IMG/VR virus record: IMGVR_UViG_3300042868_005134
Coordinates: 1 to 64,000 of that record
DNA: 64,000 bases
Direction: 5' to 3' (one strand)
Shown: positions 28,741 to 37,037 of the stretch, piece by piece
Layout of the letters: each line of letters opens with the position of its first letter
How positions within the stretch are numbered: the first letter of the stretch is position 1
Translations under genes and position numbers: made by a program
Notes under the pieces: generated by a model
The model's database searches: none
What the model was told of the DNA's origin: nothing
What the model saw: only the letters and a program-made list of their open reading frames with translations

Positions 28741-28930
28741 TTGCTATTACTCTAGGATTGTCTGTTCCTATCTTAATTACCAAACTTTTACGTATCATAC
28801 CCTCAATCGTGAAACGATCGTGTTCGTTAAAACTATTGAGGTATACCATACTGTTTAATCGTTCAAGCAAGGCTGCTTCTTCACGGCTAGTGAATATCTC
28901 GAAGTTGCTGATTAGCTCGTTAATTTTCAT
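28730..28930 (-). CDS. Hypothetical protein
   Basis: MKINEL start; 66 aa. Confidence 0.65.
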   Translation of the reverse strand: MKINELISNFEIFTSREEAALLERLNSMVYLNSFNEHDRFTIEGMIRKSLVIKIGTDNPRVIANEF

Positions 28931-31029
28931 CTTAATTTTGCAATAGTTAGCATCTTGTCAAGTTCTTCGTAGTACTGCCTGTCTTCCGATTTTGTTCCGC
29001 CTGCGGGTATGCCTAATTTTGCTCTACCTTGATCAATTACAGAAGGCTGTGTTGCCATTCTTTGACTAACTGACAGTTTAGTTGGGTCTACTGGTGCTGC
29101 TGGGCTTGCAGCTTGTAGTGCTGGTTGATTTACTCCGGGTCTTGGAGCAGCTTTCATCTGAGCGGCAGTTGGGCCGCCTTGCCCTCCACGGCCGCCACCG
29201 GCATTACTATTCATGTTTACACCAGTTCTGATCTGTGTGTTAGCAGTTTGATTTGGTTGATCTAATCTACGTGGATCAGGAGCAGTCCCGCGCCCTGCTC
29301 CTGCTGTACTGGGAGCAACGCCTTGAGGCAACGGAACATTGCCACTGACTGCTTTTGGAAATTGTTGCATTGCTGTTCGTGTAGCTGGTCCCATGACACC
29401 GTCTGCTTTAATTTTTGCGCCAGCAGCAATTAACTTATCTTGTAATGCTTTTATGTTAGGGTCGCTTTTAGCTAGTGTTTTAGCTGGTGCTGCAGGACTT
29501 GCGGCTTGGCCACCTGCTGGTGCTGCAGCGGTAGTTGTCTTCTCACCTGTTTCAGGATTTGTTCCATCTGGCATTGTAACATTCTGACCTGCTGCGTTCA
29601 CACCATTGGCCGCTTGAGTAGCTGCTTGGGCATTGGCTGTCATTGCCGCTCCCATGTCAGCATCATCTTGATCAGCTGCTGTCATTGCTGGAACCGCTGG
29701 GCTTGCTGCTTGTTGTGGTTGGGCAGCGGCAGCATTAGCTGTCATAGCTGCACCTAGTTCAGCATCGTCTCTGTCTGCTTGATTAGGGTCAACTTTTTGT
29801 GCTGTTGGTGTACCAGCTAATTGTTTTATTCTAGCTAATTCTGCTGCTGCTTCTTCTCCGGGATTTCCTGCTCCTGTGGCTGCGCTGGTTGAGTTACCAC
29901 CGGCTGCATTTGCTCGCATAGCTGCTCCCTGCTCAGCATCGTCTCTGTCTGCTTGATTAGGGTCAACTTTTTGTACTGCCGCTGGTGCTGGTGCTGGTGC
30001 TGCCGCTGGTGCTGGTGCTGCCGCTTGTGCAGCCTGTACCACAGCCTGGCCACCGCCGGAAACTAGATCTGAGCCATCTCCTGTTTTGATCGGTTTTCCG
30101 TCGCCACCAACTACTTTTCCAGCGTTTGGATTGGCTGTTTGGAATGCTGCAATATCTTGTTGTGTAGCAGGCTTGTATCCCATTCTTTGTCGAATAACTG
30201 GATCAATAGGAGTTCCCGGAGGAGCATCTTTTAGTTCAGTAGGTTTCATACCAAACAATCCTTTGACTGAATTAAGGTTCTTTTGACCTTGAGCCATTTG
30301 CTTGGCATAGTCGGCGTCAGACATTGGCTCATCGCCAGCCCGCTCAACTAGTTGTTCCGTTAACCTGTCAGCGGCGTTGTGTAGGCCCGCAAGTCTTAAC
30401 ATTCTGATAGTTTCATTCATTTTTTCAATTCCTTCTGTAGTTGCTGGCTGAAACACAGTTTCGCCTGGTTTGGGTTCGTCTGGTTTTTCTCCGCCAGCCG
30501 CGGGAGTTTTGGACAGTACAAAACCTTTACCAGTTGGGTCGCGTGTCAAGCTGGCCTTGGGCGCAATGGTTTGTGTTCCGTCTTTGTTGTCAATAGTTAC
30601 CTTATCACCGGTGGCTGCTAGTATTTGTCCAGGTGCTCCGTCCATCTCAGCAATACTGGATTCTGGTGTAGGATTGTCTTGTTTATCACTGGCAGTTGTT
30701 GTCAGTGTAAACTTTTTATCTCGGTTAAATGGTTTAGACATCATGGTAACTGCCGCTTTGTTAGCCGCTTCTTTACCTCTAAACTGATAAGGCTGACCTT
30801 CTTTATTTTTTAAAAGTTTGCCGTTGATTCGAATGTAGTATGTGCTGGACTGTTCTTTGCGTTGTTGTTCATCTTCATGCCCCAACTCATGTTCCATCTC
30901 ACGACGTTTGAATTCTCGTTTGCCGTAATCCATTTGATCCTGTTGATATCTGTCATAGTTGCCAGGGCTCATGGTATCTGGATTGCTACTACCGTAGCGG
31001 CCGCCTTCATTTACTTGTCTAACTTTCAT
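28927..31029 (-). CDS. Low-complexity modular protein with peptidoglycan-binding-like domain (probable internal head protein)
   Basis: SDPNIKALQDKLIAAG..IKADGVMGPATRTAM resembles PG_binding_1; Ala/Pro/Gln-rich; internal repeats. Confidence 0.6.
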   Translation of the reverse strand: MKVRQVNEGGRYGSSNPDTMSPGNYDRYQQDQMDYGKREFKRREMEHELGHEDEQQRKEQSSTYYIRINGKLLKNKEGQPYQFRGKEAANKAAVTMMSKPFNRDKKFTLTTTASDKQDNPTPESSIAEMDGAPGQILAATGDKVTIDNKDGTQTIAPKASLTRDPTGKGFVLSKTPAAGGEKPDEPKPGETVFQPATTEGIEKMNETIRMLRLAGLHNAADRLTEQLVERAGDEPMSDADYAKQMAQGQKNLNSVKGLFGMKPTELKDAPPGTPIDPVIRQRMGYKPATQQDIAAFQTANPNAGKVVGGDGKPIKTGDGSDLVSGGGQAVVQAAQAAAPAPAAAPAPAPAAVQKVDPNQADRDDAEQGAAMRANAAGGNSTSAATGAGNPGEEAAAELARIKQLAGTPTAQKVDPNQADRDDAELGAAMTANAAAAQPQQAASPAVPAMTAADQDDADMGAAMTANAQAATQAANGVNAAGQNVTMPDGTNPETGEKTTTAAAPAGGQAASPAAPAKTLAKSDPNIKALQDKLIAAGAKIKADGVMGPATRTAMQQFPKAVSGNVPLPQGVAPSTAGAGRGTAPDPRRLDQPNQTANTQIRTGVNMNSNAGGGRGGQGGPTAAQMKAAPRPGVNQPALQAASPAAPVDPTKLSVSQRMATQPSVIDQGRAKLGIPAGGTKSEDRQYYEELDKMLTIAKLR
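29759..29974. repeat. Exact 42-bp direct repeat (29759-29800 and 29933-29974)
   Basis: Encodes QKVDPNQADRDDAE twice. Confidence 0.85.
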
Positions 31030-31742
31030 TTGTGTTCTCCGAGGCTAAGGGCCTTGTCTTGTAATTTGTCAATGTGTTGCTGTAACTGCTGAATAAAACC
31101 CTTGGCTCTTAGCACTTTGAACGCCACGTTCTCCACACTAAATTCGCCACCTTGTTCCAAGCCTGACTGACGTAGTTTTCTAATTTCCTGGTACATCTCT
31201 TTTGCTTCGTCAATGTCATCGGTAGTTAAAGCCTGCATAATCTTATTTAAGTAATTTTCAACTTTAGCCTCAACATCTCCGTCATCTATCTTGATGGTGG
31301 CCATTGTGGGTTCACTGACCCACTTGTTATCTAACACGCTGTATATGCCCAAACTGTGATGCTTTTGATCTTCTGGCTGTACATAAACTTCCACGTCAAT
31401 GCCTTTGATTTTGATGTCGTGTACGTAATTATACTGATTTTTCTTGGCGTCGTAAAGTGGCTTCAGTAACAGTTCGCGCTCTCGAGGCACTGTCACTATG
31501 AGATGTAAATCTATGTCACTTTGAGCTGTGTAACTGTAGGCAGCATTGCTACCTGAAATAGTAACGTCCTTGAGCAGAAGTTCTGGGATGTCGATAAAAT
31601 CTATAAAATGTTTGGCTATTTGTAACAACTTGTATCTAACTTGAGATTTAAGTACAGATCCGCGCCATAGTAGTGGGTTGAGTTCCTTGTGAAACTGAAC
31701 AGCTGAGTCTACTATGCCTTCTGTAAATTCTCTTAGATACAT
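31026..31742 (-). CDS. Pol-beta superfamily nucleotidyltransferase
   Basis: ISGSNAAYSYTAQSDIDLHL (GS...DxD) and third carboxylate VEVYVQ. Confidence 0.75.
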   Translation of the reverse strand: MYLREFTEGIVDSAVQFHKELNPLLWRGSVLKSQVRYKLLQIAKHFIDFIDIPELLLKDVTISGSNAAYSYTAQSDIDLHLIVTVPRERELLLKPLYDAKKNQYNYVHDIKIKGIDVEVYVQPEDQKHHSLGIYSVLDNKWVSEPTMATIKIDDGDVEAKVENYLNKIMQALTTDDIDEAKEMYQEIRKLRQSGLEQGGEFSVENVAFKVLRAKGFIQQLQQHIDKLQDKALSLGEHK

Positions 31743-32559: not shown

Positions 32560-32585
32560 AAAAAAGCCCTAGTCGAAACTAGGGC
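32560..32585 (-). terminator. Rho-independent terminator
   Basis: GCCCUAGU-UUCG-ACUAGGGC followed by a U run. Confidence 0.85.
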
Positions 32586-32612
32586 CATCTTCCCATCCCG
32601 AGAAAGATTAGA

Positions 32613-33077
32613 TTAAGACCATGTAACGCCAGTACAAGTGCTGGTAGTTACTGCCACTGTGGCGCCGCCTAGGGCACCACTGATTGCTGCTTCAAGAATA
32701 CTGAAAGTTTCAGTGCCTGTTACAGGATCACCAGTTGTTGCGCCTGGGTTTGTGTTGAAGTCTGGAGCCATGTAAACAATAGTGCTGTCGCCACCGCCTG
32801 ATACTGAAGGTGCAAATACTGCAAATAGTTCACTGGTCACTTGTAGAGCACGTACTACTTTGCTGTAATCGCTGTTAGCTGCTTCAGGTGTCGCTGTGAT
32901 GTCTACACCAGTGATAACCACTTTGTAGCCACGCAGGTTTGGTGTGCTGAATGTCAACAATGGTGATGTTGCTGTACCGTTTAGGCCGTCATAGGCTGCG
33001 CCTGGACTTTGTACTGCTTTTAGATAGTTTGCGGCAATGCTTACACCACCGCTGGTTGTTCCGATTAAACTTGGCAT
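32613..33077 (-). CDS. Probable abundant virion protein (monocistronic)
   Basis: TAAATA (33133-33138), 5' hairpin GCCACA-GAG-UGUGGC, strong GAGGAG SD, own terminator; small-residue-rich. Confidence 0.65.
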   Translation of the reverse strand: MPSLIGTTSGGVSIAANYLKAVQSPGAAYDGLNGTATSPLLTFSTPNLRGYKVVITGVDITATPEAANSDYSKVVRALQVTSELFAVFAPSVSGGGDSTIVYMAPDFNTNPGATTGDPVTGTETFSILEAAISGALGGATVAVTTSTCTGVTWS

Positions 33078-33168
33078 AATAATATCTCCTCTGATTTATG
33101 CTTTAAGCCACACTCTGTGGCCTTTGTAATATTATTTAGTTCAAATGGAAAAAACTAGCCCAAAAGGG

Positions 33169-33834
33169 TTATTTTTCGCGATTGTAACTTTGTGGGTTTT
33201 GAAGGTGTTGAACCAGTATGGGCAGCAGATCAAAGTTAGGCAGTTTGTTTCTAAAGCTGTTTAATATGCGATAGGCCAGTTGCTGTATGTCGCTGTCCAA
33301 AGGATCGTGATAGCTCAACATACGGCGTATTTCTTTATACTCATAGTTTTCTATAGTTAATGCTTGTTCCAACTGCATGTAAAAATAGTTGCCGCGTCCT
33401 GAGTTGCCGGGCAAGCTGTGTAACCAGCCGTTTAGGGCAGTTACAGGCAAGAATGTGCGTTCCCTAGACAGTTTTGCTTGACTGCTATTGAATATAGTTT
33501 CAACACGACTGGCAGGTGCTGTAACAAAGAATATAAAGTTGTGTAGATCCGTTGCGCTGGATCTAAATTCAGTATAACCGCTGTACTGTGAGGTTTGTCT
33601 AGCATAGTTAACGGCAGCATCCTGGCCTTTCTTTAACCTACTTAAGAACTCCAATGCCAATACACAAAGGTACACTGATTCGCAAGCTTCTTTAAAGGTT
33701 ATCTTTACATCAGCTTCATTTTGAATGATACGGGCTTCATGTAGTTCTTTGATAAAACTCATCATGCCTTTTGCTCTTGGTTCCAAGCTGTGTCCGCCTG
33801 CCATTACAGCACGATCCATGTCAGTAAACATCAT
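33169..33834 (-). CDS. Hypothetical protein
   Basis: ATGA overlap with upstream gene; internal MSFIKELHEAR. Confidence 0.65.
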   Translation of the reverse strand: MMFTDMDRAVMAGGHSLEPRAKGMMSFIKELHEARIIQNEADVKITFKEACESVYLCVLALEFLSRLKKGQDAAVNYARQTSQYSGYTEFRSSATDLHNFIFFVTAPASRVETIFNSSQAKLSRERTFLPVTALNGWLHSLPGNSGRGNYFYMQLEQALTIENYEYKEIRRMLSYHDPLDSDIQQLAYRILNSFRNKLPNFDLLPILVQHLQNPQSYNREK

Positions 33835-34982
33835 GTAGGTGTCCAACGCTTTCTAGGCACTAGTTTTACTTTACCAAACTGCTTAGATGCGTCAGGATAA
33901 CGAACTCGGCCTTCGCCATTTGTGTCCCATATTTCGGCCTGCTGGCCTGCTTCCACTTGATCAATGATGCTGTCTTTTAGGTTCATTATCTGTATGACTA
34001 GACTAAAAATAGCAGCCAACGAATTTTTATTCATTTGTGCCAATTCTTTGATCTTGGTCTGCTTGTTGGTACTGACCTTGCTGGTAGCTAGCCAATTGTA
34101 AAAATGATCTGGATTCATGGCACCAAGTTGTTTGGCCTTGGCTGTTTGATTCACGTAGGTGTACAATATATTTTTAAGGTCGCCTAGTCCAGCAGTGCCT
34201 TGTAGAAAGCTATCAATCTGTGCGGCATGTTGATTTAGGTATACTTCAACATCGGTAATGGCATCTGCGTCCACGCTGGGTGTAGTAGAGTTATATATAG
34301 GGCCTTGTACAATTAGGTCAGCTGTTTGATCAAACATGCTAAAGTCGTCCATGGGTTCTTGTTCATCATCGCCCATGCCAAACTCAGGAAAGAAAGCATG
34401 TCCAACCACCATGGCTTGTGCTTGACTAATACGCTTGCCTAGTTCACCTGTGCCTCTTACATGATAGCAAGTTTTACTCTTGGGATTAGGGCAGAATGTG
34501 TACACACCTTGCTGATCTATTTCTGGACGTTTTAAAAACAAGCCGTCAGCATACACAAATCCCACAAAGTCTCTTGGTGTTGCTCTATCAAACAACGGAT
34601 ACAACTCTGCGAACTGTTGAGCAAATTGTTTGCGGCCAGCCAGTTCTTCTGGAGTCTTCGCGCTGCCGCTTTTGTTCACTATAAAATCAGTTAGTTCTGC
34701 CGGGCTAGTGGTCATTGCTCCGCGGCTCCAGCCATTGTGTCCTGCTAGTACTAAGGGTCCACCTTTCTTTGCACGTCCCCAATAGATTTGAGGATTACCG
34801 TCCCACTTCATACGCAGGCTACTAGCACCTTCTGTAGTGGCTAGATCTTTAACGTGACTCAGGGCTTCCAGTGTGCCTTTGCTGCCATGGAAGAATACTA
34901 GATCTTCCAGGTGATTAAATGCTCTGCCTAACTTTTTAGTTACGGCAGCTTCTGCTTCTTTTAGGAACTCTGTTGCTCTCAT
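33831..34982 (-). CDS. KxDG-motif (ligase/ATP-dependent nucleotidyltransferase-like) protein
   Basis: RAFNHLEDL, MKWDGNPQIYWG, YADGLF, GEGRV, VKLVPR resemble ligase motifs I, III, IV and V. Confidence 0.5.
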   Translation of the reverse strand: MRATEFLKEAEAAVTKKLGRAFNHLEDLVFFHGSKGTLEALSHVKDLATTEGASSLRMKWDGNPQIYWGRAKKGGPLVLAGHNGWSRGAMTTSPAELTDFIVNKSGSAKTPEELAGRKQFAQQFAELYPLFDRATPRDFVGFVYADGLFLKRPEIDQQGVYTFCPNPKSKTCYHVRGTGELGKRISQAQAMVVGHAFFPEFGMGDDEQEPMDDFSMFDQTADLIVQGPIYNSTTPSVDADAITDVEVYLNQHAAQIDSFLQGTAGLGDLKNILYTYVNQTAKAKQLGAMNPDHFYNWLATSKVSTNKQTKIKELAQMNKNSLAAIFSLVIQIMNLKDSIIDQVEAGQQAEIWDTNGEGRVRYPDASKQFGKVKLVPRKRWTPT

Positions 34983-35773
34983 ATCTTGCTCAATATATTA
35001 CGGAACCATTCGTTAACTGGCGGTGCGCTTGGCACTTGCGGTACTGGTGTTCGCTGAACCCAATTCTTGTCTTGTTGCGCTTGTGCCAACAAGGCTTGTC
35101 CTTGTTGGGCTGGAAGACTTGACACAATAGCTTCCACACTGTCTATGGCAGTACCGTTAGGCACACCAACTAGTGCCTGTGCTATCTCGTCCCAGTCATC
35201 TGTTACTAGCTCGCCCTTTTTGTTATCAGGTGTACGATTATACAATCCTTCCCAGGCACTGTAAACATAACCTTTTTGTTTGGCTAGCATTGCTAGCATC
35301 AATTGCTTGCTAACACCTTTGTAAGGGCTACCTTTTGGTATCTTGTGTTGATGGTAGCGGGCAATTTTCTTTACTTTGTAAATTGTTTCCAAGTCCACTT
35401 GGTAAGCATTTTCGCCAAATGGCACACGCACAAACACGTTGACACCCGCTTGTGCTGTTTTAAATCCACGCTCATCAAAATAGCTGGCCAGGGCCTTACG
35501 TGCTAGTTTTGCTTGTTCTTTAGGGTCTTGCGAAATCTTTGCTGTTTCAAAGTGCTTGATAACATCTGCTAGTTCAACTTGTAGGTCTAGATCACCACTC
35601 CATTCTTCGGGACTCTTATCAGGGTCTGGTTCATAGGTACTGCCCACAGCTTCAGATGACAAGTCGATGGCGGCCAATTGTTTGTCCACTATGGCTCTTA
35701 CTTCGTCGACAAACTTGGGATTAATTTTCCTGGTGTCTGGGAATATAGCGTTTTTGCTCTCACGGAGTATCAT
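34979..35773 (-). CDS. Pol-beta superfamily nucleotidyltransferase
   Basis: AVGST...SGDLDLQV and YQVDL third acidic residue. Confidence 0.65.
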   Translation of the reverse strand: MILRESKNAIFPDTRKINPKFVDEVRAIVDKQLAAIDLSSEAVGSTYEPDPDKSPEEWSGDLDLQVELADVIKHFETAKISQDPKEQAKLARKALASYFDERGFKTAQAGVNVFVRVPFGENAYQVDLETIYKVKKIARYHQHKIPKGSPYKGVSKQLMLAMLAKQKGYVYSAWEGLYNRTPDNKKGELVTDDWDEIAQALVGVPNGTAIDSVEAIVSSLPAQQGQALLAQAQQDKNWVQRTPVPQVPSAPPVNEWFRNILSKI

Positions 35774-36020
35774 CTTTGTTTTCCTGTATTCGTTTGATGC
35801 CGCGTTTGAATTTAGCTGGTTCAGCAGTTCTAATAGCGTTTAGAAAGCGGCGCTCTAATTCGGCTGCTGTTTCTAAATCGTAGTTTTCACGTATCAACGT
35901 AAGTAGATTAATAGCACTTTCAATCAAGTTAGTGCCACGACTTTCAATAACCAAATCTTTATTACGGTTAACGCCTAAGTCGCTAAGTTCTTGTAGTATT
36001 GACCTTGTGCTTTTTCTCAT
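35760..36020 (-). CDS. Hypothetical protein
   Basis: MRKSTRSILQEL...ELERRFLNAIR; TAAATA at 36044-36049. Confidence 0.7.
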   Translation of the reverse strand: MRKSTRSILQELSDLGVNRNKDLVIESRGTNLIESAINLLTLIRENYDLETAAELERRFLNAIRTAEPAKFKRGIKRIQENKDDTP

Positions 36021-36157
36021 TGTGTTACAGCATCCCTTTGCTATATTTACCGTTTTTCTCTTGCTAAAAGTTTTTTGTGCGATGCCACATTAGTTTGTAT
36101 AAATACTCAGTAGAAACCATGATATGGTTCTATACACACTTACACAAGGATTATAAC

Positions 36158-36334
36158 ATGAAAATGCTATCAAAGCAAATGATTAGGCTAATGGAACGTC
36201 TATCTGAAATGTTCCCAGGCTCATCATATCAAAGCCGATTAGACAGTTATCTAAGTACCAAAGGCATTACCGATGCCGCTCAGCTTGAAAACTACATCAA
36301 GCAATTCAATTCTCAAAAGGAAAGTTATCTATGA
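36158..36334 (+). CDS. Small protein, DUF3563-like
   Basis: YQSRLDSYLSTKGITDAAQLENYIKQF; SD AAGGA; TATAAATA at 36098-36105. Confidence 0.55.
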   Translation: MKMLSKQMIRLMERLSEMFPGSSYQSRLDSYLSTKGITDAAQLENYIKQFNSQKESYL

Positions 36335-36450
36335 AAACAATCTTAAACTCAATCTGGTCATTTTTAGAAGCATTTGGGCAAGCCCGTGTGGCCGCAAGTC
36401 TTGCTCGTCAGGGCCGTATAGAAGAAGCCAAAGCCGTATACAGAGCCTGA
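36331..36450 (+). CDS. Small protein (39 aa)
   Basis: Not in track. MKTILNSIWSFLEAFGQARVAASLARQGRIEEAKAVYRA; ATGA overlap. Confidence 0.6.
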   Translation: MKTILNSIWSFLEAFGQARVAASLARQGRIEEAKAVYRA

Positions 36451-36461
36451 TAAATATTGGC

Positions 36462-37037
36462 ATGAACTTGGTGTATATTCACGGGGCTAATGCCACTAGC
36501 GAGAGCTTTAACTATATTAAGAGTAAACTAGGCCAAGGTCTAGACATTAACTATGACAGTCGAAATGGGTTTGAAAATAACCTAAAAGACATGCAATCAA
36601 CATTGAGCAACTACACTGACATGGTGTTCGTTGCCCATAGCTTGGGCGGCATATACAGTTTACATTTGGCCAACGCAATGCCCAGTGCCGTTAAAGGTGC
36701 TGTGACATTAAGCACACCTTATGGTGGTGCCGAAGTAGCGGACTATGCTCGCTACTTCTTGCCGTTTAGCAGACTGATGCGCGACATTGGTCCTAGCAGT
36801 TGGGTTATGAAACAGGCAAGGAACATTAAGATACAGCATCCTTGGACCAACATAGTAACAGTCAAGGGTCAAAGTGCCTTTATGCACGAGCCCAATGACG
36901 GTGTAGTTACTATTGCCAGTCAAAAACATCACGAAGACATGGAATTAGTAGAAGTGGATTATAACCACTACGAAGTTGTGCTCAGCGACGAAGTGATTAA
37001 ACTTATTAAAGAACGAATAAAAAAGTTTAAAAAATAA
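36462..37037 (+). CDS. Alpha/beta hydrolase (lipase/esterase-like)
   Basis: YIHGA oxyanion motif, AHSLGG nucleophile, NDGVV Asp, NHYEV His; start revised to 36462. Confidence 0.85.
   Translation: MNLVYIHGANATSESFNYIKSKLGQGLDINYDSRNGFENNLKDMQSTLSNYTDMVFVAHSLGGIYSLHLANAMPSAVKGAVTLSTPYGGAEVADYARYFLPFSRLMRDIGPSSWVMKQARNIKIQHPWTNIVTVKGQSAFMHEPNDGVVTIASQKHHEDMELVEVDYNHYEVVLSDEVIKLIKERIKKFKK

What the first reader, a model, noticed from the sequence alone, without database searches (positions are those of the whole stretch)
33169..36049. Four-gene late operon pairing a Pol-beta nucleotidyltransferase with a KxDG ligase-like protein
Seen: overlapping ORFs of 86, 264 (GS...DLD), 383 (KWDG...EG...KLV) and about 221 aa behind TAAATA, with a second NTase at 31026-31742. 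Known: KxDG is the adenylated-lysine motif of RNA/DNA ligases and capping enzymes; Pol-beta NTases include CCA-adding, AMPylating and cyclic-nucleotide-synthesising enzymes. Inference: an uncharacterised RNA end-repair/tailing, protein-NMPylation or anti-defence system. This is the best candidate here for a new enzymatic system.
Basis: inference. Interest (0 to 1): 0.7.

Follow-up and report, generated by a model that had tools for sequence, protein, structure and literature searches.

The report
Phage mini-polymerase X paired with ligase
A giant freshwater phage carries, behind a conserved late promoter, a stripped-down family-X-type polymerase next to an unrecognised ligase-fold enzyme (Pfam DUF6267); the two are neighbours or fused in hundreds of uncultured phages, and the ligase-like half is a near-universal gene of marine T4-like cyanophages, which are known to lack a recognisable DNA ligase.

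Summary
Four overlapping minus-strand genes (86, 264, 383 and 221/225 aa) sit behind a TAAATA element that relatives conserve at the same place.

- **Core module.** These two genes form the functional pair. They are adjacent in 40 of 49 dereplicated loci and fused, in both orders, in at least 28 representative proteins. An NMNAT-like adenylyltransferase is often added.
- **Flanking genes.** The 86-aa and 221-aa genes are syntenic companions that also occur without the pair.

Most likely this is a fill-and-seal polynucleotide repair or maturation module. I favour DNA; RNA repair of the RlaP type is the main rival. No biochemistry exists for either protein.

The parts
36044..36049 (-). TAAATA core of a T4-type late-promoter-like element (context GGTAAATATAG), 24-29 nt upstream of the 86-aa gene's ATG
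   Evidence: Sequence read. ATAAATA occurs 72 times in the genome, and 50 genes have it within 60 nt upstream of their start. A TAAATA core is conserved at about -22 to -29 in 26 of 30 distinct relatives.
36098..36105 (+). Divergent perfect TATAAATA for the plus-strand genes (small ORF and class-3 lipase/esterase)
   Evidence: The inverted ATATTTAT is conserved in relatives' upstream regions. The lipase family is identified.
35760..36020 (-). 86-aa protein of unknown function (phrog_11854). Very conserved (83-87% identity where the ligase-like protein is 65-71%). A syntenic companion, not specific to the enzyme pair.
   Evidence: phrog_11854 at E 3e-13. Homologues lie directly downstream of the DnaB-like helicase in PA5oct (annotated there as a virion structural protein), Vibrio phage 2.275.O and Atu_ph07. 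Synteny. The Pfam TopoV_HHH hit (E 1e-3, below cut-off) is not supported by the sequence.
34979..35773 (-). 264-aa minimal family-X-polymerase-like nucleotidyltransferase: palm plus thumb, no 8-kDa or fingers domain, and about 50 aa of C-terminal helices
33831..34982 (-). 383-aa ligase-fold protein, a Pfam DUF6267 member. Putative Lys59 nucleotidyl acceptor (KWDG), EG (357-358), K373. Helical insert at about 200-350. No OB domain.
33169..33834 (-). 221-aa protein (225 aa from TTG at 33846), probably helical, unknown function. Variable companion (cluster 5).
   Evidence: No family hits. Only weak HEAT/ARM-like leads. Homologue Atu_ph07 gp064. Present downstream of DUF6267 in about 24-30 of 49 loci, often after an extra ~135-aa gene.
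32613..33077 (-). 154-aa gene downstream. Possibly co-transcribed, and also has its own TAAATA at 33138.
   Evidence: Its depth in lake metatranscriptome X3 is about 126, against about 5 for the four upstream genes.
32565..32586 (-). First strong terminator-like hairpin on this strand (9-bp stem followed by a T run)
31026..31742 (-). 238-aa second Pol-beta-type NTase (GS...DID). A different family, part of the same conserved gene block.
   Evidence: phrog_36119 at E 8e-48. Homologues in cyanophages, Lak phages and Maribacter phages. Cluster 22 in the synteny analysis.

Best explanation
The core of the finding is a two-enzyme 'fill-and-seal' module for broken polynucleotides.

- **264-aa protein.** A minimal family-X-type polymerase (palm plus thumb, like ASFV Pol X). 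It adds one or a few nucleotides to a 3'-OH at a gap or recessed end.
- **383-aa DUF6267 protein.** A lysine-nucleotidylating ligase. Lys59 of KWDG takes AMP, transfers it to a 5'-phosphate, and the 3'-OH attacks to seal the break.

I think the substrate is most likely phage DNA: gaps and nicks left by lagging-strand synthesis, by recombination-dependent replication, or on DNA being readied for packaging late in infection.

In many relatives a third part, an NMNAT-like adenylyltransferase, is fused or adjacent. It may supply or regenerate the nucleotide cofactor, possibly NAD+.

The 86-aa and 221-aa proteins are conserved neighbours of unknown role.

**Shown:** the folds, the catalytic-motif conservation, the gene linkage and fusions, and the conserved late-type promoter.
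**Inferred:** the catalytic activities, the order of action, the DNA substrate and the cofactor.
For: **Fold and motifs of the polymerase-like protein**
- Both palm and thumb are covered, whereas other NTases cover only the palm.
- The carboxylate triad is invariant in 189 homologues.

**Ligase fold and motifs**
- Searches support the fold.
- K59 is conserved in 181/182, D61 and G62 each in 181/182, E357 in 186/187, G358 in 187/187 and K373 in 186/187 homologues.

**Functional coupling**
- The gene directly upstream of DUF6267 hits the PolX-like HMM in 40 of 49 dereplicated viral loci, down to about 30% identity.
- 28 of 61 long representative proteins carry both domains in one chain, in both orders.
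- One fusion ORF was seen intact on contigs from two samples.

**DNA context**
- In other lineages the pair follows the DnaB-type helicase directly.
- In T4-like cyanophages DUF6267 lies in the uvsX-gp41 replication cluster.
- DUF6267 is found in 469 phage records, 454 of them cyanophages.
- The two complete cyanophage genomes tested have neither an ATP- nor an NAD-dependent DNA ligase.
- This matches the published statement that cyanomyoviruses lack g30 and rnh homologues 'or have distant homologues not yet identified' (PMC2984593).

**Third partner**
- NMNAT-like fusions occur in at least 15 representatives.
- From general knowledge, NAD+ dependence is known only for DNA ligases.

**Late promoter**
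-.
Against: - DUF6267 has no OB domain, which all characterised DNA ligases possess.
- This phage and two jumbo relatives already encode a gp30-type ATP DNA ligase, so DUF6267 is not needed as the sole DNA ligase here.
- The genome lacks any canonical RNA ligase and carries 41 tRNAs, which fits an RNA-repair role.
- No PolX-like gene was detected in the two cyanophages, so the pairing is not universal.
- Complex prediction gave no answer.
- No residue-level superposition was available, so the assignments of motif III/IIIa and of the steric-gate residue (Y140) are inferred from order and spacing only.
Confidence: 0.45

Rival explanations
1. RNA repair. The PolX-like enzyme restores one or two nucleotides at the 3' end of tRNAs or other RNAs trimmed by host nucleases, and DUF6267 religates the break. 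This would be a functional analogue of the RlaP NTase plus RNA ligase pairing, which counters anticodon-nuclease-type defences.
For: - The best structural neighbours of DUF6267 are RNA ligases: NgrRnl/Rnl5, T4 Rnl2, REL1, Trl1 and Rnl1. An AFDB cluster is named 'RNA ligase domain'.
- An architecture without an OB domain and with a helical module is typical of RNA ligases.
- The 383-kb genome has no Rnl1, Rnl2 or RlaP family member yet encodes 41 tRNAs and a tmRNA.
- Literature: Pol-beta NTases that accompany RNA ligases are common in jumbo phages and are predicted to restore lost nucleotides (PMC7824862). RlaP has been shown to add 1-2 NMPs to damaged RNA 3' ends (bioRxiv 10.64898/2025.12.29.696909).
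- T4 Rnl1 (gp63) is also expressed late (general knowledge).
Against: - The NTase matches the templated PolX palm+thumb. It does not match the RlaP architecture (NTase plus all-helical domain), nor CCA-adding enzymes or TUTases.
- It is not a PF10127 member.
- No end-healing kinase or phosphatase was seen in the conserved block, apart from one HAD-like lead in a single fusion.
- In several lineages the context is the replisome.
- DUF6267 is near-universal in cyanomyoviruses, which carry few tRNAs and lack a DNA ligase.
Confidence: 0.3
2. Virion-delivered or end-processing enzymes. The late-made pair is packaged or acts on genome termini. It would fill and join the ends of the incoming or maturing linear genome (circularisation, nick repair of packaged DNA, protection from exonucleases), rather than serve general replication.
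For: - A late-type promoter is conserved.
- The 86-aa neighbour's family is annotated as a virion structural protein, and in PA5oct neighbouring gene products were detected in virions by ESI-MS/MS.
- The block lies among structural and lysis-type genes in this phage.
Against: - There are no proteomic data for the PolX-like or DUF6267 proteins themselves.
- The PA5oct neighbours are not homologous to them.
- Metatranscriptome depth of the four genes is low compared with the adjacent 154-aa gene.
- Cyanophage homologues sit in the replication module.
Confidence: 0.1
3. Not a polynucleotide ligase at all. The ligase-fold protein, together with the NMNAT-like partner and the NTase, makes or transfers a nucleotide-containing small molecule or modifies a protein, for example NAD-related metabolism, nucleotide signalling or NMPylation used against host defence.
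For: - Recurrent fusion to an NMNAT-like HIGH-superfamily adenylyltransferase.
- Extra invariant residues not typical of ligases (H24, E26, D27, K336).
- Weak overall fold scores.
Against: - The full set of ligase-type motifs (KxDG, EG, K) is conserved in the right order and secondary-structure context.
- The partner is a palm+thumb polymerase-like protein, whose thumb is a nucleic-acid-binding element in PolX enzymes.
- Cyclic-nucleotide synthases and AMPylators match far worse.
- No defence or anti-defence family hit was seen.
Confidence: 0.1

Closest known systems
African swine fever virus Pol X with its DNA ligase (viral base-excision gap filling and sealing)
   Different: There is no detectable sequence similarity. 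The phage protein has about 50 extra C-terminal residues. The partner here lacks the OB and DNA-binding domains of the ASFV ligase, carries a 160-aa helical insert, and is frequently fused to the polymerase. The host is a bacterium. No activity has been shown.
RlaP (PF10127) NTase with RNA ligases in bacterial and phage RNA repair
   Same: A Pol-beta-superfamily NTase is genetically linked to a ligase. The proposed order is the same: add missing nucleotide(s) to a 3'-OH, then ligate (PMC7824862; bioRxiv 10.64898/2025.12.29.696909).
   Different: The 264-aa protein is not a PF10127 member. Its second domain is an alpha/beta PolX-type thumb, not RlaP's helical domain. The ligase is DUF6267, not RtcB, Rnl1 or Rnl2.
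Nick-sealing RNA ligases: Naegleria NgrRnl (Rnl5), T4 Rnl2, trypanosome REL1
   Different: About 7-9% identity and no Pfam RNA_ligase hit. DUF6267 has an N-terminal H-x-E-D helix and a large helical domain inserted between the motif IIIa region and motif IV, instead of a terminal accessory domain.
Bacterial LigD (NHEJ polymerase-ligase fusion)
   Same: A polymerase and a ligase in one polypeptide or operon, for filling and sealing DNA breaks. In LigD the ligase prefers a 3'-ribonucleotide, which shows that RNA-ligase-like preferences can serve DNA repair (general knowledge).
   Different: The LigD polymerase is an archaeo-eukaryotic primase-type enzyme, not PolX. The LigD ligase has an OB domain. 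No Ku partner was seen here.
Pfam DUF6267 (PF19782), 'T4-like gene cluster 71' of cyanomyoviruses
   Same: The 383-aa protein is a divergent member (54 bits, cut-off 27). The P-HM1 protein scores 457 bits.
   Different: The family has no assigned function. In cyanophages it pairs with an NMNAT-like 'cytidyltransferase' rather than with the PolX-like gene.

Membership tests
Covalent nucleotidyltransferase superfamily (ATP/NAD ligases, capping enzymes) | Adenylyltransferase (NTase) domain fold | tested here: met
Covalent nucleotidyltransferase superfamily (ATP/NAD ligases, capping enzymes) | Motif I KxDG with the nucleotidyl-acceptor lysine | tested here: met
   K59-W-D-G lies in a loop between strands 56-58 and 65-70 of the model. 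K is conserved in 181/182, D in 181/182 and G in 181/182 homologues.
Covalent nucleotidyltransferase superfamily (ATP/NAD ligases, capping enzymes) | Motifs III, IIIa, IV (EG) and V (K-x-K type lysine) in order | tested here: inconclusive
   E357-G358 (186/187 and 187/187) and K373 (186/187) fit motifs IV and V. D146 (165/185) and Y173 are candidates for III and IIIa. These are assigned by order and secondary structure only; no residue-level superposition was available.
Covalent nucleotidyltransferase superfamily (ATP/NAD ligases, capping enzymes) | Formation of a covalent enzyme-NMP intermediate | not testable with these tools
   Needs alpha-32P-ATP, NAD+ or GTP labelling of purified protein with a K59A control.
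DNA ligases (ATP- or NAD-dependent) | OB-fold domain following the NTase domain; Pfam DNA_ligase_A_M or DNA_ligase_aden match | tested here: not met
   All 383 residues are accounted for by the NTase core plus a helical insert. There is no Pfam ligase hit. The genome's PF01068 match is a different gene at 332740-333300.
RNA ligase families Rnl1 (PF09511) and Rnl2/Rnl5 (PF09414) | Sequence-profile membership | tested here: not met
   Only 2 of 71 family members touch PF09511, at E 0.048. There are no genome matches.
Pfam DUF6267 (PF19782) | Score above the gathering threshold | tested here: met
   54.2 bits against a cut-off of 27. 70 of 71 aligned homologues match.
Family X DNA polymerases | Palm with G-S and the DxD...D carboxylate triad | tested here: met
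   G44 166/166, S45 141/166, D61 183/183, D63 183/185, D127 187/188.
Family X DNA polymerases | PolX-type thumb (N-subdomain) following the palm | tested here: met
Family X DNA polymerases | 8-kDa dRP-lyase and fingers (HhH) domains | tested here: not met
   Absent from the 264-aa protein, as in ASFV Pol X. The 86-aa neighbour's TopoV_HHH hit is below the cut-off (19 bits against 27) and no GhG hairpin is visible.
Family X DNA polymerases | Sequence-profile membership (PF14792 palm, PF14791 thumb) | tested here: not met
   No match at E<=10 in the genome, and none in the hmmscan.
Family X DNA polymerases | Template-directed dNMP insertion into gapped DNA | not testable with these tools
   Needs primer-extension and gap-filling assays with dNTPs and rNTPs.
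RlaP (RNA-ligase-associated Pol-beta NTase, PF10127) | PF10127 profile match and NTase plus all-helical C-terminal domain | tested here: not met
   No PF10127 hit. The model's second domain contains a three-stranded sheet like the PolX thumb, whereas the RlaP crystal structure has a helical domain.
T4-type late transcription unit | TATAAATA-like element about 25 nt upstream of the first gene, enriched upstream of genes genome-wide | tested here: met
   Presence of a gp55-type sigma factor and of a mapped 5' end was not tested.

The most novel reading that the evidence does not exclude
DUF6267 is a previously unrecognised family of polynucleotide ligases. It is the 'missing' replicative DNA ligase of T4-like cyanophages, where it is a near-core gene in about 450 sequenced genomes that lack gp30. 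It works with an NMNAT-like partner that supplies or regenerates its nucleotide cofactor. In a large clade of uncultured freshwater and marine phages it is coupled or fused to a minimal PolX, giving a self-contained gap-filling and sealing enzyme: the first phage PolX-ligase machine.
Probability: 0.3. Interest if true: 0.8.

Novelty: new variant of a known kind. Interest (0 to 1): 0.66.

Why it matters
If the activities are confirmed, four things follow.

1. **A new ligase family.** The ligase/capping superfamily would gain a branch with an unusual architecture: a helical domain inserted into the NTase core and no OB domain.
2. **A testable candidate for an old gap.** Since 2005-2010 it has been noted that marine T4-like cyanophages have no recognisable DNA ligase or RNase H. 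DUF6267 is present in 454 cyanophage records and sits in their replication cluster.
3. **Minimal PolX enzymes beyond ASFV.** Palm+thumb family X polymerases, so far best known from ASFV, would be shown to be widespread in bacteriophages and repeatedly fused to a ligase.
4. **Possible tools.** A compact natural polymerase-ligase fusion could be useful in molecular biology.

If the substrate turns out to be RNA, the pair would instead be a new RNA-repair counter-defence module. It would explain why a 383-kb phage with 41 tRNAs has no canonical RNA ligase.

Tried and rejected
**Sequence searches that found nothing**
- PDB sequence searches with both proteins and with the DUF6267 profile.
- NCBIfam on the operon proteins.
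- Megablast of the region against phage records.
- tblastn of the 264-aa protein against phage records.
- Literature search for DUF6267.
- PolX Pfam models against the genome.

**Tests with negative or uninformative results**
- I tested whether the genes between the 86-aa and 221-aa homologues in PA5oct and Atu_ph07 are hidden homologues of the pair. hhalign probabilities were below 1%. Atu_ph07 gp065 did turn out to be PolX-like by BLAST to fusion segments.
- I tested whether the cyanophage genes upstream of DUF6267 are PolX-like. They are not.
- The search for related loci with the whole alignment failed because no stretch was conserved enough. Single-protein queries worked.
- Complex prediction of the two proteins gave 'no answer' and is not used as evidence either way.
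- ESM Atlas look-ups of the 86-, 139- and 221-aa proteins gave only sub-threshold leads.
- Pfam and PHROGs on ten conserved neighbours gave only a lipase and one 'virion structural protein'.

**Ideas considered and dropped**
- The 86-aa protein as an HhH or 8-kDa domain supplied in trans. The hit is below the cut-off, there is no hairpin motif, and the family occurs without PolX.
- DUF6267 as this phage's only DNA ligase. A gp30-like gene exists.
- The first read-laying run failed. The second worked on a shorter stretch.


Full report
**Setting.** The window is the first 64 kb of a 383,411-bp viral record that CheckV rates as complete. It is a jumbo phage with about 41% G+C and 41 tRNAs plus a tmRNA. 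It has a ribonucleotide reductase, collagen-like tail fibres and a gp30-type ATP-dependent DNA ligase at 332740-333300. Near-identical sequence occurs in freshwater and lake metatranscriptome libraries. A minus-strand block of 47 predicted genes runs from position 74 to 36020, and the finding sits at its head.

**The observation.**
- All four ORFs are present as described: 86 aa (35760-36020), 264 aa (34979-35773), 383 aa (33831-34982), and 225 aa from TTG or 221 aa from ATG (33169-33846/33834).
- They overlap by 14 nt, ATGA and ATGA, which is typical of translational coupling.
- TAAATA lies at 36049-36044.
- A k-mer enrichment over all gene upstream regions gave (G/A)ATAAATA(T/C) as the top motif. 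ATAAATA occurs 72 times in the genome, and 50 genes have it within 60 nt upstream of their start. This is the T4/cyanophage late-promoter type.
- The local copy (GGTAAATATAG) is a weaker variant.
- In 26 of 30 distinct relatives a TAAATA core sits about 22-29 nt before the ATG of the 86-aa homologue. It is usually paired with an inverted copy serving a divergent lipase gene.
- On the minus strand no terminator-like hairpin separates the four genes. The first good one (32586-32565) follows the next 154-aa gene, which has its own TAAATA at 33138.
- Lake metatranscriptome contigs cover all four genes at low depth (about 4-17). In one run the 154-aa gene reaches about 126. This uneven profile fits transcription better than DNA carry-over but does not prove it.

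**The 264-aa protein.**
- No Pfam, PHROG, NCBIfam or PDB sequence match exists.
- About 140 close homologues were found.
- A model built on 44 of them is confident (pLDDT 92.2).
- Foldseek against PDB gave 220 hits at E<=1e-3. The top 50 were all DNA polymerase beta or lambda.
- Against Swiss-Prot models, residues 17-212 align to Pol beta 150-334, to Pol lambda 385-570 and to B. subtilis PolX 146-321. That is exactly the palm plus thumb.
- TUTases, poly(A) polymerases, CD-NTases, OAS, CCA-adding enzymes and MenT follow with mostly about 100 aligned residues, which is the palm only.
- In 189 distinct homologues, including distant and fused ones, G44, D61, D63, Q125, D127, G153 and G176 are invariant or nearly so.
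- The protein is therefore a minimal PolX-like enzyme with ASFV Pol X architecture. It lacks the 8-kDa and fingers domains and has about 50 extra C-terminal residues.
- A Tyr-His pair 13 residues after the third carboxylate may correspond to the Tyr-Phe steric-gate position of Pol beta. This is inferred from spacing only.

**The 383-aa protein.**
- It is a divergent member of Pfam DUF6267 (54 bits, cut-off 27).
- The family is large: 1,412 clusters at 90% identity and 383 representatives at 50% identity.
- A model from 71 diverse sequences is very confident (pLDDT 94.7, pTM 0.90).
- Foldseek alone found nothing significant. Its best hits were fungal tRNA ligase, LigIV, an archaeal RNA ligase, Rnl2 and REL1.
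- In the unbiased search of 48,161 clusters, all the long matches were ligases: NgrRnl 7.0, T4 Rnl2 6.5-6.6, REL1 6.6, Trl1 6.2-6.3, then LigIV, LigIII, a minimal bacterial ligase, T4 Rnl1, Lig1, ASFV ligase, and T7 and Chlorella virus ligases.
- The remaining hits were short helical bundles that match the insert.
- AFDB clusters added an 'RNA ligase domain' protein (E 8.6e-4) and two 'cytidyltransferase-like' fusion proteins.
- In 199 distinct homologues the conservation is as follows: K59 181/182, D61 181/182, G62 181/182, E357 186/187, G358 187/187, K373 186/187. H24, E26, D27, R70, D146, N166, Y173 and K336 are also nearly invariant.
- The lysine lies in a loop between two strands, as motif I does in ligases.
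- About 160 residues of helices are inserted before motif IV, and there is no OB domain.

**Linkage of the two.**
- I fetched 78 viral loci with DUF6267 homologues, from 100% down to about 30% identity. I called their genes and searched them with HMMs of both families.
- In 40 of 49 dereplicated loci the gene immediately upstream of DUF6267 belongs to the PolX-like family.
- One distant example was confirmed by profile comparison (probability 88%, E 3e-6).
- Among the 61 representative proteins of 450 aa or more, 28 contain both domains in one chain. PolX-like is usually N-terminal, but C-terminal in P0289, P0322 and P0362.
- One 1,118-aa fusion is an intact ORF on contigs from two samples.
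- Fusions in both orders, together with conserved adjacency, are strong evidence that the two act together.
- At least 15 representatives carry a further domain homologous to the cyanophage 'cytidyltransferase'. Its weak best matches are NMN/NaMN adenylyltransferases, all below their cut-offs.
- This phage encodes a stand-alone copy at 275039-275896, with GRFNPPHQGH and ISSATDLR motifs.

**The other two genes.**
- The 86-aa protein (phrog_11854) is strikingly conserved: 83-87% identity where DUF6267 is 65-71% and PolX-like is 30-55%.
- Its family also occurs directly after the DnaB-like helicase in PA5oct, Vibrio phage 2.275.O and Atu_ph07, where no homologue of the enzyme pair lies beside it.
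- The 221-aa protein has a homologue in Atu_ph07 (gp064) and is replaced or displaced in many relatives.
- Both belong to a longer conserved block: 86 aa, PolX-like, DUF6267, a ~135-aa gene, the 221-aa family, ~104 aa, the 139-aa family, ~79 aa, the 238-aa NTase, and further small genes.
- I found no function for these neighbours. They are companions by synteny. Nothing shows that they belong to the enzymatic system.

**DNA or RNA?**

For RNA:
- RNA ligases are the nearest structures.
- There is no OB domain.
- The genome has no Rnl1, Rnl2 or RlaP despite its 41 tRNAs.
- The literature describes Pol-beta NTases (RlaP) that accompany RNA ligases and add 1-2 nucleotides to damaged RNA before ligation.

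For DNA:
- The NTase has the templated-polymerase palm+thumb rather than the RlaP architecture.
- In other lineages the pair follows the replicative helicase.
- In T4-like cyanophages DUF6267 lies between gp41/uvsX and the NMNAT-like gene.
- DUF6267 is present in 469 phage records, 454 of them cyanophages.
- The two complete cyanophages tested have neither an ATP- nor an NAD-type DNA ligase.
- A 2010 review states that cyanomyoviruses lack g30 and rnh homologues, 'either distant homologues not yet identified' or absent (PMC2984593).
- The NMNAT-like partner hints at NAD+, a cofactor known only for DNA ligases (general knowledge).

Against the DNA reading, this jumbo phage and two relatives keep a gp30-type ligase as well.

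I therefore favour a DNA fill-and-seal role (about 0.45) over RNA repair (about 0.3). The common mechanism, nucleotide addition to a 3'-OH followed by Lys-AMP-mediated sealing, I hold at roughly 0.7-0.75.

**Novelty.** Both proteins belong to known superfamilies, so this is not categorically new. But DUF6267 has no assigned function and no paper in the searchable library. The PolX-like family has no profile in Pfam, PHROGs or NCBIfam. The pairing, the fusions and the NMNAT-like third partner are, as far as I could find, undescribed. I rate it a new variant of a known kind, with above-average interest because it offers a concrete candidate for the missing cyanophage ligase.

**Limits.**
- No coordinates were available for residue-level superposition.
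- The ligase fold scores are moderate.
- The complex prediction was uninformative.
- The expression evidence comes from assembled metatranscriptome contigs.
- All functions are inferred.

Noticed in passing
window 28927-31029 (-), C-terminus; proteins P0124 and P0202: The 700-aa low-complexity protein with a peptidoglycan-binding domain ends in ...ELDKMLTIAKLR. Long variants of the PolX-like family in other phages end in ...LDAMLRIARLK and ...ELIAMLSIAGLR. It is the only protein of this genome with that tail. This may be a shared docking or processing peptide.
   Followed up: partly
window 32613-33077 (-): The 154-aa gene just downstream of the operon is represented at about 126x in one lake metatranscriptome, against about 5x for the four genes. 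It has its own TAAATA at 33138. It has no family hit and may be an abundant late or structural protein.
   Followed up: no
genome 274310-274606 (-) (L086:2310-2606) and protein P0225: A 98-aa ORF ends in ...NNIRPGDAEWFKLWFSLPYMTGEQPR. This closely resembles the C-terminal extension of a PolX-like variant (P0225...NNTQPGTEEWFKLWFSRPYLTGEKPE). The window's PolX-like protein keeps only ...NEWFRNILSKI. A mobile C-terminal peptide module, perhaps a docking motif, is possible.
   Followed up: no
genome 275039-275896 (-) (L086:3040-3897): A stand-alone NMNAT-like HIGH-superfamily adenylyltransferase (GRFNPPHQGH ... ISSATDLR) is homologous to the domain fused to DUF6267 in other phages. It lies next to a Dps/ferritin-like gene and a ClpB-like ATPase.
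   Followed up: partly
window 36273-37037 (+): The divergently transcribed gene is a class-3 lipase/esterase (HSLGG). It is conserved opposite the operon in many relatives and served by a perfect TATAAATA at 36098-36105.
   Followed up: partly
whole genome, e.g. 355745-364320: The genome has 41 tRNA genes in two main arrays plus a tmRNA at 375530-375935. A second upstream motif, TGTATAAT (an extended -10 type, probably early promoters), is also enriched.
   Followed up: no
L007:4148-4981 (Agrobacterium phage Atu_ph07 gp065): This 277-aa hypothetical protein matches N-terminal segments of the PolX-like family by BLAST and keeps G-x-G...SGDIDV. It lies just upstream of the homologue of the 221-aa protein. 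The PolX-like family therefore reaches cultured jumbo phages.
   Followed up: partly
phage records, e.g. S-RIM2, S-RIM8, P-SSM7 (hits H61-H79): In many cyanomyoviruses the DUF6267 match spans only about 885-900 nt for query residues 8-400. These versions are about 100 residues shorter, so part of the helical insert may be missing.
   Followed up: no
L018:7119-8639 and L018:755-5677: In one 93-kb contig the DUF6267 gene (65% identical to the window's) has no PolX-like neighbour. It is followed by a 506-aa protein with the NMNAT-like domain and preceded by a 1,640-aa ORF.
   Followed up: no
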